Assembly (NCBI GenBank): GCA_002269645.1 | Contig: NIVC01001102.1 | Coordinates: 293,584 to 357,583 of the forward strand | Reading direction: 5' to 3' | Source of the DNA: Macrostomum lignano | Taxonomy: Eukaryota | DNA length: 64,000 nucleotides | Shown: positions 11,275 through 57,920 of the stretch, piece after piece | Numbering within the stretch: position 1 is the first letter of the stretch | Layout of the letters: each line of letters starts with the position of its first letter | Made by a program: the position numbers and the translations under genes | Notes under the pieces: model-generated | Told to the model about the DNA's origin: nothing | Database searches by the model: none | What the model saw: the letters and a program-made list of their open reading frames with translations, nothing else

Positions 11275-11500
11275 AATGGTGGTGCAGCCGTTGCTTATGC
11301 AGAATAAGTCACGATCGGTTTGCTTTCCCCCCGACCTAAGCGTAGCGTCAACTCCGCTGAAGACGCCGCCGAATCTGCCGTTGCCGTGGTGTAGCCGTCT
11401 CCAGCTCTGCCGCGGGCCCAGTTATCGGTCAGACTGCCACCTCGCTCGCTGTCGCGGCAGTTTCGCCTCTGCTGACTTTAAGCACTCACGCGCAATTGTA
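11275..11500 (-). pseudogene. Degenerate relic of exon 4 (glycine-rich domain) of the ALK-like array
   Basis: Minus translation RRNCRDSERGGSLTDNWARGRAGDG matches [20 protein letters not shown] of the intact copies. Gly tracts are deleted and the foldback element is inserted near its 3' end. Confidence 0.7.
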
Positions 11501-12613
11501 GGCAAATGCTCGCACAAGGTGTACAGCGCCACTGAATATATGATTGTCAGGCAAGTACACACTTTGCTCCTTGAGTGTTGACCCTCAGGGGCGTGTATTG
11601 CACGACAATTGCCGCAAGACGAATTTTCTTGAACGATCGAATCGAACCTCGGAACTTTGGCGCCAGAGGAAGACACGCTGATCATTCCTGCTGCTTGCCT
11701 GATACCCCAGGGAAAGGTTTGAGGGTAGGCATGGGTAGCCTCACAAGGCAATGGTTGTTGTCTGGGTTGCTGCCCTACTTGGCGAGGGAATCCTCAAGTT
11801 CATTTCCCAGGATTTGCTGTGACCGGGTGTCCAGTTCATACTAATCCTGTTAAGGACATTCACCTGTCCTTGTCCCGTCACTATCCTTAAACCGTGTGCC
11901 AATGTTCATCTACTGATAAGAAGAAAGTATAGAGTGTTTGGTGCGGAAATCTTGCAAGAGTTTAGTTCTAGCTGTTCAGTATGGCTATTGGGTAGAGTCT
12001 AGTCTTGGTCATTTAGTATGCAAAAGTACTAAAGTCATTTAGTATGGCTTCCTAGTCATCCGATCGGTAGATGAACTTTTGGGGCAGCATCATCGACAGT
12101 GGCATCGCGGTTTATCTACTGCGTGCCGAATAACAGCATCATTTGGGGGTTGGGACTTTATACCTGTTGAAGAGTACCTATTTACCTAGTCATTGTGTCG
12201 ATACCTAATCCTGTTAGGCAATACATGAGTGAGTATTTGCAGAATAGAAAACATATACGAATGGTTTTGTATCTGTCGGCTCTACATTACGATATTTTTC
12301 TTTCTGTTCGGTGAAATAAATAAAAGTCACTAATGGTCTATACTCTAGTTAAGATTCAATGATTTTGATGCGACACAATCCGGTTCATGGGTGCTAAAAA
12401 CACCCATGAGCATATGAATGGGAACCTAGTTCCTTCTACTCAATTTATTAGAAATCGAAGGTACGGTCCGTTTCAAAGACCAGAGAGTAACGTTATTCTA
12501 GGTATATAGTTCGTAACGTTTTTTGGTAATCGCAACTGACATGGTCTTCGAGTTAATTTTTTTGCTTGATGCATGGCTCCACACGCAGTTGGTCGATCTC
12601 TTTCAATTAAGTC

Positions 12614-53975: not shown

Positions 53976-54996
53976 CCCCAGTCCCCCTGTCTGTTGGAAT
54001 ACAACCTTTCCAACTTCAGGAGACTGCGAAATCATTTGTGGCTGCATTCTGTGATAAAGAAAGTTCGCACTTATACTCGACATTTATCTTTGACTGCAAC
54101 ACTACTATATAGATAGGCTTGCTCGGGCAGAAACGAGCCATTCCCAGGCGGGCAGGTCAAAAGGTTGGACATTCCCAGATGAAGTGCTCCGCATTCTTAA
54201 CGTCGGAGAGGCAGAATGGGCATTCCCCACGACAGATTTTTTCCTGGAGATAGCCACGCCTGAGAAAGCGGCCTTTGACCCAAGAGGGCCACTCTGGTTA
54301 CCACCCTGATGAACCTGTGGATGAACACAAGCAGCTAAGGGCCGGGCCGTGCAGCGGGCGGGGAAGGGACAGGGGATTGCCGACAGTCGAGGGCCCAACT
54401 CTCTCTGTGCATTGATGCCACCCGACATAGAGGTGTGAAAGCAAGACTTAGGTGGAAAAAGTCCACACCTTCTTCCTAGCAGAACCTGTGAGTGACTTCG
54501 TTTGAAAAAACTGTCGCATTCTGTAGTATAGATTGCGTCTAACGGAAGCTTGGAACAATGGAAACACAAAATAAAAAAGACCACTCAGAAAGCCTGAGTA
54601 GTCAGGTAGGAAGTCAATTTTTTAATCATGCCGAACAAAAGAAGACAATGCCGACCAGTTTACCAAGCCTTTCATCACCCACGTTGTTTTTTATTATTTA
54701 TTCGAATGAAAAAAGAGCAGAATAAAAAACTATTCTATAGAAGCCGATAACTGCGCATCCACGTTCGCCGCTTTCAATATCGACTTCCTCAGATCCGGCA
54801 ACTAGCAAAATCTAAGGCCGTTTCCAAATTTGGTTTTCATTCGCAACAATCGGAATGTAGAGAAGCCAGTAAAACAATTTTTCCACCGACCAAGGAAAAG
54901 AAATATCGGTTGAGATAGTCTCGACGAAACGATAGGGTTTGATACACCGATTTGAAGGGCACTTCTGTTTAGAGCGTAAGCCGCGTCCGTTTGAAT

Positions 54997-57920
54997 TTAG
55001 TTGCATTTGTCGGCAAATAAAGCCTGCATGCGCAGCACAACAAAGCCGTGCTCGCTGAAGGAATTCCCACCAGCGATGGCCGAGCAGTCGCTGCCGCCGC
55101 AGAACGAGCCGCCTCCGCCTCCGGAATTGGATCCACCCACTCCAGCGCCACCGCCGCTGAAGCCGCCGCCTCCGCCGCCGGCTCCGTTCTTCGATCCGTC
55201 CAGCTCCATGCCGCCGCCTCCGCCGCCTCCGCCAAATCCGCCGTCGCCAGTGCCACCGATTCCAGCCTCCCCGCCGACCCAGTCATCGGCTAGACCGCCG
55301 CCTCGCTCGCCGTCGCTGGAGTTTCGCCTCGGGTTGACGGCGCTGCCAAGCCAGCCGGCGCCGCAGCCGCCGTGAGTTCCTCTATCACCAGTCCTCCAGG
55401 GTTCGTTGTAGCCGGGATGACCGTTGACACCTCCAAATCCTATCGTATCTGGCAATTTTGCGACTGAATCGCTTCCATTGACTGTGTCTTCTCCCGGCAG
55501 AGCTGTAAATTATGATCAATAATTAATTAAACTACTTTCCGAATAGATACGCCACAGAGGCCATGAAAATTTTATTTTTTATTCAAAAAGTTCAGTAACT
55601 CTTTTAGACTTTTTTGACGCTGCTTTCTAAGGACCCGGACTGGTAGCGTATGTAGCAGGGCATAGGGCCGTATGCAGAAAGCCTAGTCCAGACTAGCTAG
55701 TCCGGACTTGGGTAGTTCAGTCTATAGTCTATGGTCCAGCTAGCATAGTTCTGTCTATAGTAGACCGGTCTAACTTTGTGTTTCTGCATACAAAATCCAA
55801 GTCCAGACTAGCTTTTCAAGACCGGACTACCCTAGACAGAGCTTCTGCATACGGCCCTTTGGCTTTTACACTACTGTAGTTTTAACTAGGGAAAATAATT
55901 AGGGCGGGGGTAGATCGCGAATTTTGGGTTTCTTTATAACTATCAAGCAGTTGAGACTCGGGGAAAAAGCGCCTTGGAAGTTAGTCTTAACTGAAACAAG
56001 ACCAAGAAAGAAAGTAGGTAAGAGGCGGGGAAGTTTTAGGGAATAAGTAAACACTGTTAGAAAGGTAGTCATTGCCGCTAACAGGGCACAAAATGGGTAG
56101 TCATTGCCCACTAATATTTGCACCAAATTAACTGTAAGAACTATTGCATGCTAATCATTTTTTTCGTTTTACAACTTTGGAGTAATAAAATTTGTTATTT
56201 TCGGTTTCCTGCGTTGTTCCTTTGATCGCTAAACTACTAGGATTAGGGAAATCAGGAAGCCTGGTGGCAGCAACCTACCAGATAATCCACTAGAATTTTA
56301 AACACTAAAGTAGATAAAACCAGTAGCCTAAGCCGCGAGACTACGACTTGTCCACGTATTTGTTGTTGGTGGTGCCTTTTGCGGTGCATTTTAATAACTC
56401 CACATCTCTCTCCTCAAAGCTTAAAAGATTTTTTTCTAGTTTTATTTTACTTACCATTTTTACCTCGGCTTGAGCCGCCGCCACCACCAGCTGCAATTAG
56501 AAGGTGCTCGTCCGCAATCTCATACACAAAGCTGCCTCCTCCGCCACCGCTGCCGCAGTCCCTCGTGTCGTAACTATGCACCGAGCCGCCAGCCTGTCCG
56601 ACCACGATGGCCAGCTGAGTGCCAGCTGTCAGGTTGAAGCTGCCAGCAATCCAGGACCCGTTGCCACCGACTGTGAACCGGTATATGTTATCGCCGCCTC
56701 TGGCTCCGGCGACCTCGATGCGGTAGCAGCCAGTGAGGGTGATGTTCACCAACTGGATGCTCCCGATTCGGCCAGTGCTGCTGTCTGGAACTCGCGTAGT
56801 AAATCGCGTAGTGACTTTCTAGATATAACAGTCATAAGACAAGAATATAGTCATCAATCGACATTACAGTCATAAAACAATAGCTAGTAGTCATAAGGAA
56901 GGGTGCATTAGTACAGTGAATAAAACAATGATTTTGCTCCGAACAAACAAGAGCAATTAAGATAGACAGACAGACAGAGAGACATACATACATACAGACA
57001 GACAGACACACAGACAGACAGACAGACAGACAGACAGACAGACAGACAGACAGACAGACAGACAGACAGACAGACAGACAGACAGACAGACACACAGACA
57101 GACAAACATACACACAGACAGACACACAGACAGACAGACAGACAGACAGACAGACAGACAGACACACAGACAGACTGACAGAAAGACAGACAGACAGACA
57201 GACAGACAGATAGACAGACAGACAGACAGACAGACAGACAAACAGACAGACAGACAGACAGACAGACAGACAGACAGACAGACAGACAGACAGACAGACA
57301 GACAGACAGACAGACAGACAGACAGACAGACTGCGGCCCAAGCGTGAGGATCTCTAGGATTGAGTAATCGGTTAGTGTGTATGGTAATACTAGTGCAGCA
57401 CAACTCACTGAGCCATGTGAACGTCTCATTATTGATCATAGCAGCCAAAGTCGCATTAATGTCGGCGTTGACCAACACCTGCGATCCAGCCTCTGATCCC
57501 ACAGCTGATGGAGAATCCAGTATCGTGTTTGACAGAGAAATTCCCTTCAATATTAAGAGTCGACAAACAGTCGAGGTCGTCGTCATGGCAACGATCACTG
57601 AACAGCCTTTGATTCGGCACAGCATCATGCAGTTGTTCACATTTTTCACACCTGAGATGTTGATCACTTCGGTGCTGATAAGCGGGCTGAGGTAGAACGG
57701 GCCTTCAATCTCGCGGTAGTCGACACTACTGCAGGTGCCTAAATCGACAGAAAAGCGATTCTAAATTCATACATTCAAAACCCCGGCAATGTTTTGATAG
57801 GAATACTGTATGATTAGGAAAATTCCTGATTCCTGAAAGAAAAACTTTACCTTGCACTCCTTTCCTTTGACAACTGCACAAGAGAATAGCTACGAGGATC
57901 ACATTAGTGATTAAGTGCAT
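54997..57920 (-). CDS. Copy D: secreted PAN/apple-like + ALK/LTK-type glycine-rich domain protein (411 aa), 4 exons
   Basis: Exons 57920-57851 ([24 protein letters not shown]), 57738-57409, 56784-56455, 55502-54997; 1236 nt, all introns phase-1 GT-AG. Confidence 0.87.
55664..55858. mobile_element. MITE, possibly PIF/Harbinger-like, in intron 3 of copy D
   Basis: TIR agggccgtatgcagaa / ttctgcatacggccct; TSD not clear. Confidence 0.6.
56962..57330. repeat. (GACA)n microsatellite in intron 2 of copy D
   Basis: Direct inspection; same motif as the KYAT intron array, on the opposite strand. Confidence 0.95.

What the first reader, a model, noticed from the sequence alone, without database searches (positions are those of the whole stretch)
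11275..57920. Expanded array of stand-alone secreted ALK/LTK-type glycine-rich proteins (4 copies + 2 relics over ~47 kb)
Seen: four minus-strand genes share one 4-exon, all-phase-1 architecture: signal peptide, Cys-containing PAN/apple-like module, then two exons forming a glycine-rich domain, then a stop. There is no EGF, TM or kinase segment. Two decayed relics (~11.3 kb, ~17.6 kb) indicate birth-and-death turnover. Established: the motif series Y.I.A.GA.GG / IVVGQ.G / GGGGGSFV / LLIAAGGGG / GGFGGGG / GGYSGG defines the ALK/LTK extracellular TNF-like plus polyglycine-II supradomain, which binds ligand. Inference: this is a lineage-expanded family of soluble ALK-ectodomain-like proteins. They could act as decoys or ligand carriers, or as secreted mucus, adhesive or defence proteins using a polyglycine-II bundle. 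This is the best candidate in the window for an undescribed system.
Basis: partly seen in the sequence, partly recalled or inferred. Interest (0 to 1): 0.82.

Follow-up and report, generated by a model that had tools for sequence, protein, structure and literature searches.

The report
Secreted flatworm proteins with ALK-type domain
This stretch of the flatworm Macrostomum lignano genome holds a local cluster of genes for small secreted proteins built around the unusual glycine-rich ligand-binding fold otherwise studied only in the human ALK/LTK cancer receptors, but with no membrane or kinase part; the family is real, shared with corals, and functionally unstudied.

Summary
Four minus-strand paralogues, A to D, share a four-exon, all-phase-1 plan: signal-peptide exon, Cys-rich module, two exons encoding a glycine-rich domain, then a stop. 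Corrections: copy C has an in-frame TGA (38476-38474) where its paralogues read TGG, copy B uses a GC donor, and the 17.6 kb relic is only about 70 nt.

The window is Macrostomum lignano. UniProt A0A1I8I814 contains copy D exons 2-4 verbatim.

The glycine-rich domain is an ALK/LTK-type TNF-like plus glycine-rich (TG) domain. A family profile hits only ALK/LTK/SCD-2 among PDB sequences (E 9e-10). An AlphaFold model's top 21 Foldseek hits are all ALK/LTK/SCD-2 (E 1.5e-10). There is no EGF, TM or kinase.

The PAN/apple label is plausible but unproven.

The nearest relatives are cnidarian PAN+GRD secreted proteins (about 43% identity). The domain superfamily is large (3,994 clusters). In 53 sampled representatives it never carried a kinase and sat with adhesion or lectin modules.

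These are therefore best read as secreted extracellular binding proteins, not ALK decoys. dN/dS of 0.3-0.45 indicates constraint. Function and expression remain untested, and no literature on such proteins was found.

The parts
12614..14602 (-). Copy A, intact gene, 413 aa. Exons 14602-14530 (signal peptide), 14245-13916 (Cys module), 13844-13509 (GRD part 1), 13116-12614 (GRD part 2 plus stop). All introns GT-AG, phase 1.
   Evidence: Pfam PF12810 25.0 bits (cutoff 24.5)
19315..23551 (-). Copy B, intact ORF, 410 aa. Exons 23551-23488, 23400-23068, 22690-22358, 19817-19315. Intron 3 (22357-19818) has a GC-AG donor G|GCAAGT and contains a repeat or recombinase-like insertion.
   Evidence: PF12810 11.8 bits (below cutoff)
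37421..38911 (-). Copy C. Exons 38911-38869, 38778-38428, 38326-38006, 37908-37421. Same architecture as the others but with a premature stop in exon 2.
   Evidence: PF12810 31.1 bits
38474..38476 (-). In-frame TGA in exon 2 of copy C. Paralogues P0002, P0003 and P0004 have Trp (TGG) at this position. An alternative donor at 38488 (G|gtgcga) would skip it and give a 380-aa ORF.
54997..57920 (-). Copy D, intact gene, 411 aa. Exons 57920-57851, 57738-57409, 56784-56455, 55502-54997. Intron 2 holds a (CTGT)n microsatellite.
   Evidence: exons 2-4 identical to UniProt A0A1I8I814 (P0001); AF2 model; Foldseek
11272..11468 (-). Relic 1: decayed, frameshifted fragment of exon 4 (RRNCRDSERGGSLTDNWARGRAGDG...), about 1.1 kb downstream of copy A.
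   Evidence: tblastn E 2e-8; blastn 79% over 106 nt
17591..17660 (-). Relic 2: very short exon-2 fragment (acceptor-like ttttag|G ... VRTEVINI ... CCATCTGCTGTGGGATCAG) with an internal deletion of about 140 nt.
   Evidence: score 96 vs shuffles 63 +/- 7, max 82

Best explanation
The region is a local, dispersed cluster of paralogous Macrostomum lignano genes for small (about 410 aa), N-glycosylated, secreted two-module proteins. There are three intact genes, one copy with a nonsense codon and two fragments. SHOWN: each protein has a signal-peptide-like N-terminus. Next comes a module of about 110 aa with four invariant Cys in a C-x3-C-x4-C-x12-13-C spacing (C-x11 in copies A and C). The last part is a domain of about 275 aa that is homologous in sequence profile and predicted fold to the TNF-like plus glycine-rich (TG) ligand-binding supradomain of ALK/LTK/SCD-2. 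The protein stops immediately after that domain, so there is no EGF, transmembrane or kinase part. The closest relatives are cnidarian signal-PAN-(EGF)-GRD proteins. The copies are old duplicates (dS 0.4-1.3) under moderate purifying selection (dN/dS 0.3-0.45). INFERRED: they act outside the cell as soluble binding or recognition proteins. The TG domain would serve as a rigid binding scaffold, and the divergent PAN/apple-like module as a second protein- or glycan-binding handle. On this reading they are lectin- or adhesin-like factors of a secretion (mucus, gland product or humoral defence), and they are neither signalling receptors nor ALK-ligand traps. The family grows and shrinks by local duplication, divergence, transposon insertion and pseudogenisation.
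For: Gene models and phase-1 junctions. Independent confirmation of D's junctions by P0001. TG domain: a profile of 62 family members hits only ALK, LTK and SCD-2 ectodomains among 177,635 PDB sequences (E 9e-10 to 5e-5). The AF2 model has pLDDT 83-95 in the TNF-like core, and its top 21 Foldseek PDB hits are all ALK/LTK/SCD-2 TG domains (E 1.5e-10, target TM 0.5-0.62). Pfam PF12810 is above cutoff for A and C. Secretion: hydrophobic N-termini, no TM, 8-9 N-glycosylation sequons per copy at largely conserved positions. Constraint: dN/dS is 0.28-0.37 in the GRD, and only exons still align between copies. Architecture shared with cnidarians: P0034, P0085 and P0082 have Pfam PAN_1 plus PF12810 and end at the same point. 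Binding or adhesion context: in 53 superfamily representatives the domain co-occurs with T9SS tails, SprB, EGF, C-type lectin, laminin-G, HYR, cadherin, PKD and fn3, and never with a kinase. Turnover: two relics, one nonsense copy, and transposon ORFs between and inside the genes.
Against: No expression, localisation or binding data could be obtained. The exact spliced proteins are not in the 15-billion-protein collection, and nothing was found in M. lignano papers or their supplements. Pfam scores are marginal, with B and D below the gathering cutoff. The glycine-rich middle of the model has only pLDDT 55-70, and RMSD to ALK is 6.6-8 A. The PAN assignment is not significant by any test. The function is inferred from domain context alone.
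Confidence: 0.6

Rival explanations
1. Soluble ALK-ectodomain decoys or ligand carriers: the secreted TG domains bind the flatworm's ALK ligand (Jeb, HEN-1 or ALKAL-like) and buffer or transport it.
For: The fold is the ligand-binding unit of ALK/LTK. The proteins are soluble and secreted.
Against: The proteins are only about 22% identical to ALK but about 43% identical to non-receptor cnidarian proteins. They lack the EGF-like module that follows the TG domain in the ALK constructs matched (7nx4, 'TG and EGF-like domains of ALK'). From my own recollection of the ALK/LTK structural papers, not checked here, that module contributes to ligand binding. The superfamily is overwhelmingly non-kinase (0 of 53 sampled). 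Many divergent paralogues with dN/dS up to 0.68 in the N-terminal module are not expected for a trap of one conserved ligand. Whether M. lignano has an ALK or its ligand was not tested.
Confidence: 0.08
2. Structural or material proteins: the polyglycine-II lattice serves as a building block of an extracellular material such as adhesive, mucus, rhabdite or eggshell, not as a recognition surface.
For: The domain is about 30% glycine. Outside ALK/LTK, the next structural matches are a phage fibre, cyanophage Pam3. High copy number and birth-and-death turnover are typical of secretion-product genes. Cys counts are odd in A, C and D, which would allow intermolecular disulfides.
Against: The protein is a compact globular domain, not a low-complexity repeat. 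The specific non-glycine motifs are invariant across phyla. No expression data link it to any gland.
Confidence: 0.22
3. A decaying, largely non-functional gene cluster of transcriptionally silent duplicates on the way to pseudogenisation.
For: One copy has a nonsense codon. There are two relics, a non-canonical GC donor in B, and transposon insertions in and between genes. No transcript evidence was retrievable.
Against: A, B and D keep complete ORFs, splice signals, signal peptides, glycosylation sites and all family-invariant residues despite dS of 0.4-0.8. dN/dS is 0.28-0.45, well below 1. Introns have diverged beyond alignment while exons stay 70-90% identical.
Confidence: 0.05

Closest known systems
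ALK / LTK / SCD-2 extracellular TG (TNF-like + glycine-rich) supradomain; Pfam PF12810 ALK_LTK_GRD; PDB 7NX1, 7NX3, 7LS0, 7LRZ, 7N00, 7NWZ, 7LIR
   Same: Same motif series ([47 protein letters not shown]). Profile-level homology covers the whole domain (LTK aligned over profile positions 21-294 of 317). The predicted fold matches these structures and nothing else in the PDB at E <= 1e-5.
   Different: About 22% identity only. No membrane-proximal EGF-like module, no TM helix, no tyrosine kinase, and no MAM or LDLa domains. Preceded by a small Cys-rich module. The protein is a free secreted molecule. Ligand unknown.
Cnidarian secreted PAN-(EGF)-GRD proteins, known only as automatic predictions (e.g. 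Porites harrisoni ABFA07_017308, Stylophora pistillata AWC38_SpisGene21703 / 'loricrin-like', Pocillopora verrucosa 'putative lysozyme-like protein')
   Same: Same order of parts: signal, PAN-position module, TG domain, stop directly after the last strand. 38-47% identity across the TG domain (E 1e-26 to 1e-38). Same invariant residues.
   Different: The cnidarian N-terminal module is a canonical Pfam PAN_1, often followed by a short COLFI/fibrinogen-like segment and EGF repeats. The flatworm module is too diverged to score as PAN. In the one cnidarian-like genomic locus read, the TG domain is a single exon (L001); in the flatworm it is split by a phase-1 intron.
PAN/apple modules (HGF N-domain, plasma prekallikrein apple domains, HAI-1 N-terminal domain)
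   Same: Size of about 100 aa, a beta-alpha-beta-beta core in the model, and a C-x3-C-x4-C-x12-13-C-x-L cysteine pattern that hhalign places on the coral PAN cysteines. HGF N-domain, HAI-1, a PAN-bearing copper oxidase and apple domains recur among the top Foldseek hits.
   Different: No Pfam PAN family matches any of seven flatworm modules. hhalign probability is 3.7%. Best Foldseek E is 0.55. There are only five Cys, not the six of the canonical three-disulfide core.
Non-kinase PF12810-superfamily proteins of bacteria and animals (T9SS-sorted surface proteins, multi-GRD giants, EGF- or lectin-linked animal proteins)
   Same: Same domain used in secreted or surface, adhesion-type contexts without a kinase.
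   Different: Different partner domains. Many are very large multi-domain proteins, whereas the flatworm proteins are minimal two-module versions.

Membership tests
ALK/LTK-type TG (TNF-like + glycine-rich) domain, Pfam PF12810 | Match to the Pfam ALK_LTK_GRD model above its gathering score (24.5 bits) | tested here: inconclusive
   A 25.0 and C 31.1 bits pass; B 11.8 and D 12.7 bits fail. M. lignano paralogues score 16-27 bits and coral homologues 23-34 bits.
ALK/LTK-type TG (TNF-like + glycine-rich) domain, Pfam PF12810 | Profile-level sequence homology to solved ALK/LTK ectodomains | tested here: met
   A profile of 62 family members hits 9 distinct PDB sequences, all ALK, LTK or SCD-2, at E 9.1e-10 to 4.6e-5. 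The LTK alignment spans profile positions 21-294 of 317.
ALK/LTK-type TG (TNF-like + glycine-rich) domain, Pfam PF12810 | Fold: TNF-like beta-sandwich with the glycine-rich subdomain inserted | tested here: met
   AF2 model of P0001 (copy D) has pLDDT 83-95 in the core and about 90 in the C-terminal strands. Foldseek top 21 hits are all ALK/LTK/SCD-2 TG domains, E 1.5e-10 to 4e-6, target TM 0.37-0.62. Caveat: the glycine-rich middle has pLDDT 55-70 and RMSD is 6.6-8 A.
ALK/LTK-type TG (TNF-like + glycine-rich) domain, Pfam PF12810 | Lattice of polyglycine-II helices in the glycine-rich subdomain | not testable with these tools
DSSP shows coil there, as expected for PGII, but this proves nothing.
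ALK/LTK receptor tyrosine kinases | Membrane-proximal EGF-like module after the TG domain | tested here: not met
   The proteins end 15-20 residues after the last TG strand, and there is no EGF Pfam hit.
ALK/LTK receptor tyrosine kinases | Transmembrane helix and intracellular tyrosine kinase domain | tested here: not met
   No TM-like window beyond the N-terminal module. No kinase Pfam hit. The stop codon is conserved with cnidarian homologues. Neighbouring kinase ORFs are intronless Ser/Thr-type genes with their own starts, one on the other strand.
ALK/LTK receptor tyrosine kinases | Binding of ALKAL, Jeb or HEN-1 type ligands | not testable with these tools
   Needs binding assays. The presence of such ligands or of an ALK gene in M. 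lignano was not examined.
PAN/apple domain (Pfam PAN_1 to PAN_4) | Match to a Pfam PAN model | tested here: not met
   No PAN family at E <= 10 for any of 7 flatworm N-terminal modules. A profile search with the module finds only M. lignano GRD paralogues.
PAN/apple domain (Pfam PAN_1 to PAN_4) | Conserved cysteine core and beta-sheet-plus-helix fold | tested here: inconclusive
   Four invariant Cys in PAN-like spacing, aligned by hhalign to the coral PAN Cys but with probability 3.7%. The AF2 exon-2 model has pLDDT 72. Foldseek finds HGF N-domain, HAI-1 and apple domains repeatedly, but the best E is 0.55 and TM 0.43-0.51. Only 5 Cys are present in the module.
Cnidarian-type secreted PAN-GRD proteins (uncharacterised predicted family) | Order signal / N-terminal Cys module / TG domain / stop, with high TG-domain similarity | tested here: met
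   38-47% identity to coral and jellyfish-type proteins. P0034, P0085 and P0082 carry PAN_1 plus PF12810 and end at the same point.
Classical secretory proteins | Cleavable N-terminal signal peptide, no membrane anchor | tested here: inconclusive
   Hydrophobic h-regions (10-residue KD 2.7-3.2) in all four N-termini, 8-9 N-glycosylation sequons and no TM. No dedicated signal-peptide predictor was available.

The most novel reading that the evidence does not exclude
Secreted PAN-TG proteins are an ancient eumetazoan family, shared by Cnidaria and a basal flatworm. They would represent the free-standing ancestor of the ALK/LTK ligand-binding ectodomain: the receptor kinase arose by capture of such a secreted binding module. 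The surviving free forms would still bind endogenous small protein ligands, giving an unrecognised extracellular ligand/binder system in invertebrates.
Probability: 0.12. Interest if true: 0.7.

Novelty: new variant of a known kind. Interest (0 to 1): 0.42.

Why it matters
The TNF-like/polyglycine-II domain is known experimentally only as the cytokine-binding unit of the ALK and LTK receptors. This work shows that a tractable, transgenic model flatworm carries a constrained, multi-copy family of minimal secreted versions, with the same architecture in corals. That offers a simple system to ask what this fold does outside receptor signalling, what it binds, and where the ALK ectodomain came from. 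It also corrects database names: several of these flatworm proteins are labelled 'receptor protein-tyrosine kinase' although they have no kinase. The practical significance is moderate. The genes are already predicted in public databases, and the domain is widespread in non-kinase proteins, so this is an uncharacterised family, not a new kind of system.

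Tried and rejected
1. A single-sequence phmmer search of copy A against PDB found no ALK/LTK, only chance-level hits. A profile was needed.
I used database model P0001, which contains copy D, as the target instead.
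3. The PAN test was tried five ways: Pfam on whole proteins, Pfam on modules, hhalign against coral PAN, a profile homology search, and an exon-2 model plus Foldseek. None was significant.
4. Standard blastn and tblastn missed the 17.6 kb relic. Only a gap-tolerant alignment found it.
5. Tandem clustering of the cnidarian-like homologues: only one GRD gene lies within +/-10 kb in each of two loci, and the Stylophora locus was not on record.
6. Nine literature searches found no paper on stand-alone ALK-type GRD proteins. One fungal genome paper notes PF12810 with no function. A coral 'tyrosine kinase receptor' DEG cannot be linked to this family.
7. Supplements of two M. lignano transcriptome or ISH papers have no ALK, LTK, apple or PAN entries.
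8. I considered and rejected the idea that the neighbouring kinase ORFs are downstream exons of the GRD genes.
9. I considered that the ~300-aa metagenome homologues are prokaryotic. This was rejected for the one locus examined, L001, a 4.8 Mb contig with animal-type genes.

Full report
What is there. The window is eukaryotic, with GC of about 0.45, introns, transposons and minisatellites. tblastn with the exon peptides and blastn with the genes find four full copies of one gene on the minus strand, plus one clear fragment. Reading the sequence and assembling by script gives these models.

- A: 14602-14530 | 14245-13916 | 13844-13509 | 13116-12614 (413 aa).
- B: 23551-23488 | 23400-23068 | 22690-22358 | 19817-19315 (410 aa).
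- C: 38911-38869 | 38778-38428 | 38326-38006 | 37908-37421.
- D: 57920-57851 | 57738-57409 | 56784-56455 | 55502-54997 (411 aa).

Every junction is phase 1. All introns are GT-AG except intron 3 of B, which has a consensus GC donor (G|GCAAGT), is 2.5 kb long and carries a repeat insertion.

Independent confirmation and organism. The best database hit, P0001 (UniProt A0A1I8I814, Macrostomum lignano), contains my copy D from exon 2 to the stop, residue for residue, including both downstream junctions. Its N-terminus is translated from window DNA at 58.2-59.5 kb. The window is therefore M. lignano. That database model skips the signal-peptide exon and enters exon 2 through an acceptor 9 nt inside it. 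It is probably chimeric, because all four copies share a homologous signal exon and the conserved first Cys that the model loses.

Corrections to the observation.

- Copy C has an in-frame TGA at 38476-38474. Its close paralogues P0002, P0003 and P0004 read Trp there (GAKVWKADDSDW). C is therefore a recent nonsense pseudogene or null allele, unless a weaker donor at 38488 (G|gtgcga) is used, which would give a 380-aa ORF.
- Relic 1 (11272-11468) is a frameshifted exon-4 piece whose glycine runs have decayed.
- Relic 2 is only about 70 nt (17591-17660): an acceptor-like site, 'VRTEVINI', then directly the 'SAVGS' region, meaning an internal deletion of about 140 nt. It scores 96, against 63 +/- 7 (max 82) for shuffles.
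- The cluster is dispersed. A gypsy-type element, P-element-like remnants, a kinase, an ankyrin gene and an ASC-type channel lie between the copies.

The glycine-rich domain. Pfam PF12810 (ALK_LTK_GRD) is marginal. A scores 25.0 and C 31.1 bits against a cutoff of 24.5; B scores 11.8 and D 12.7, both below it. A single-sequence search of the PDB fails. A profile of 62 family members hits exactly nine distinct PDB sequences, all ALK, LTK or C. elegans SCD-2 ectodomains. E ranges from 9e-10 to 5e-5, and LTK aligns across nearly the whole profile. An AlphaFold2 model of P0001 is confident in the beta-sandwich (pLDDT 83-95, about 90 in the closing strands) and moderate (55-70) in the glycine-rich middle. 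Its top 21 Foldseek matches in the PDB are all ALK/LTK/SCD-2 TG domains (E 1.5e-10 to 4e-6, target TM 0.37-0.62), followed only by a cyanophage fibre. The domain ends 15-20 residues before the stop. No EGF, TM or kinase is present. The cnidarian homologues terminate at the same point, so splicing on to further exons is not expected. The kinase ORFs in the window are intronless, TM-less, Ser/Thr-type genes with their own starts, and one is on the other strand.

The N-terminal module. Seven flatworm modules share four invariant Cys in a C-x3-C-x4-C-x12-13-C-x-L pattern (C-x11 in A and C), plus a fifth upstream Cys. No Pfam PAN model matches any of them. hhalign places the Cys on those of the coral PAN domains but at 3.7% probability. 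A profile search finds only more M. lignano GRD paralogues. An exon-2 model (pLDDT 72) gives no significant Foldseek hit. Even so, HGF N-domains, HAI-1, a PAN-bearing copper oxidase and apple domains recur at E of 0.55 or higher with TM 0.43-0.51. Coral homologues carry a bona fide PAN_1 in the same position. I rate this module as a probable, strongly diverged PAN/apple domain that has not been demonstrated.

Relatives and context. Besides at least 20 M. lignano clusters, the nearest relatives are cnidarian proteins at 38-47% identity. They come from Acropora, Pocillopora, Porites, Stylophora, Montipora, Desmophyllum and Oculina, and there is one record I take to be a jellyfish. Several of them carry PAN and/or EGF in front of the domain. 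The ~300-aa 'ena' hits resemble these closely. The one locus examined lies on a 4.8 Mb contig with animal-type genes, and the domain is a single exon there.

An exhaustive profile search of 1.84 billion representatives finds 3,994 clusters at E <= 1e-3 and 854 at E <= 1e-10, including giants with 5-10 copies of the domain. Of 53 sampled representatives, none has a kinase. The partner domains are T9SS sorting tails (7), SprB, EGF, C-type lectin, laminin-G, HYR, cadherin, PKD and fn3. The domain is thus a general extracellular module of secreted or surface, adhesion-type proteins, and ALK/LTK is a minority use.

Are the genes alive? Between copies only the exons still align. dS is 0.43 (B-D) to 1.3 (A-C). 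dN/dS is 0.35-0.45 overall, 0.28-0.37 in the TG domain and 0.29-0.68 in the N-terminal module. All family-invariant residues are kept, along with 8-9 N-glycosylation sequons per copy. A, B and D therefore look functional. I could not obtain expression evidence.

How it most likely works. Shown: these are secreted-type, glycosylated two-module proteins with a TG domain and no signalling part. Inferred from the domain's role in ALK/LTK and its company in the superfamily: they are soluble extracellular binding or recognition proteins. The N-terminal module would provide a second binding handle, and the family would diversify by birth and death, as secretion-product or defence-type families do.

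- The ALK-decoy idea is disfavoured. Identity to ALK is low, the EGF module is missing, the paralogues are many and divergent, and the superfamily is non-kinase.
- A structural or material role is a serious rival, given 30% glycine and a phage-fibre-like second-best fold match.
- A dead array is unlikely given the evidence of constraint.

Novelty. The genes and the architecture already exist in databases as automatic predictions. Some are misnamed 'receptor protein-tyrosine kinase', 'PE-PGRS', 'loricrin-like' or 'WSC domain-containing'. Nine literature searches found no study of such proteins. I class this as a new variant of a known kind: a known domain in a minimal secreted architecture, conserved between Cnidaria and a flatworm, with unknown function.

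Noticed in passing
window 58248-59484 (-) and UniProt A0A1I8I814 (P0001): The public gene model for copy D ('WSC domain-containing protein', 618 aa) fuses ORFs upstream of D, including a PVPDHQLQ tandem repeat, to D. It does so through an acceptor 9 nt inside exon 2 and skips the signal-peptide exon, so it is probably a chimeric prediction. Several paralogues are named 'receptor protein-tyrosine kinase' although they have no kinase domain.
   Followed up: partly
window 6253-7827 (-) and 8417-9934 (+): Two paralogous intronless protein-kinase ORFs (524 and 505 aa) lie head to head. Pkinase scores exceed PK_Tyr scores and there is no TM segment. They are unrelated to the GRD genes.
   Followed up: partly
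window 42409-43317 (-): A third kinase is split into two same-frame ORFs by a stop. This is most simply a short intron inside the kinase domain.
   Followed up: no
window 24800-27800 (+): A Ty3/gypsy-type retroelement (RVT_1 plus integrase core) forms a GC-rich island (0.56-0.61, against about 0.45 background) just upstream of copy B.
   Followed up: partly
window 19860-22350, especially 20158-20216, 21680-21738, 20351-20470 and 20911-21433 (+): Intron 3 of copy B holds an insertion. It has 59-nt direct repeats about 1.5 kb apart, an internal inverted repeat, and an ORF ending in a tyrosine-recombinase-like motif (GHSSTAIERY). A similar peptide (ITGQKSESTVRRY) occurs at 47510-47794 (+).
   Followed up: no
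window 31844-34071 (-): P-element/THAP9-like transposase remnants (Tnp_P_element HTH hit) lie between copies B and C.
   Followed up: partly
window 34161-36914 (+): A 2.7 kb minisatellite of a 24-nt unit (reads as MSACGAKM in one frame) with strong positive GC skew (+0.2). Other tandem arrays lie at 3398-3966, 10400-11300, 39586-39972, 40900-41500 and 58850-59140.
   Followed up: no
window 56960-57340 (intron 2 of copy D) and 4400-5150: The same (CTGT)n microsatellite occurs in D's intron and about 52 kb away, inside what looks like an aminotransferase gene intron.
   Followed up: no
window 45250-46248 (-), 50687-52742 (-), 1631-2050 and 5139-5441 (+): An ankyrin-repeat ORF, an amiloride-sensitive sodium channel (ASC/DEG/ENaC) gene and class I/II aminotransferase exons are the unrelated neighbours.
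   Followed up: partly
copy A residues 173-228 (window approx. 13560-13730, -): A single-sequence search gave a weak (E 0.42) alignment of the strands '[26 protein letters not shown]' to the TNF-homology domains of APRIL/BAFF. This is in keeping with the 'TNF-like' name but is not significant.
   Followed up: no
window 13262-13350 (intron 3 of copy A), 303-392, 15002-15094: A short interspersed repeat of about 90 nt (76-80% identity) is present in A's intron and at two other places in the window.
   Followed up: no
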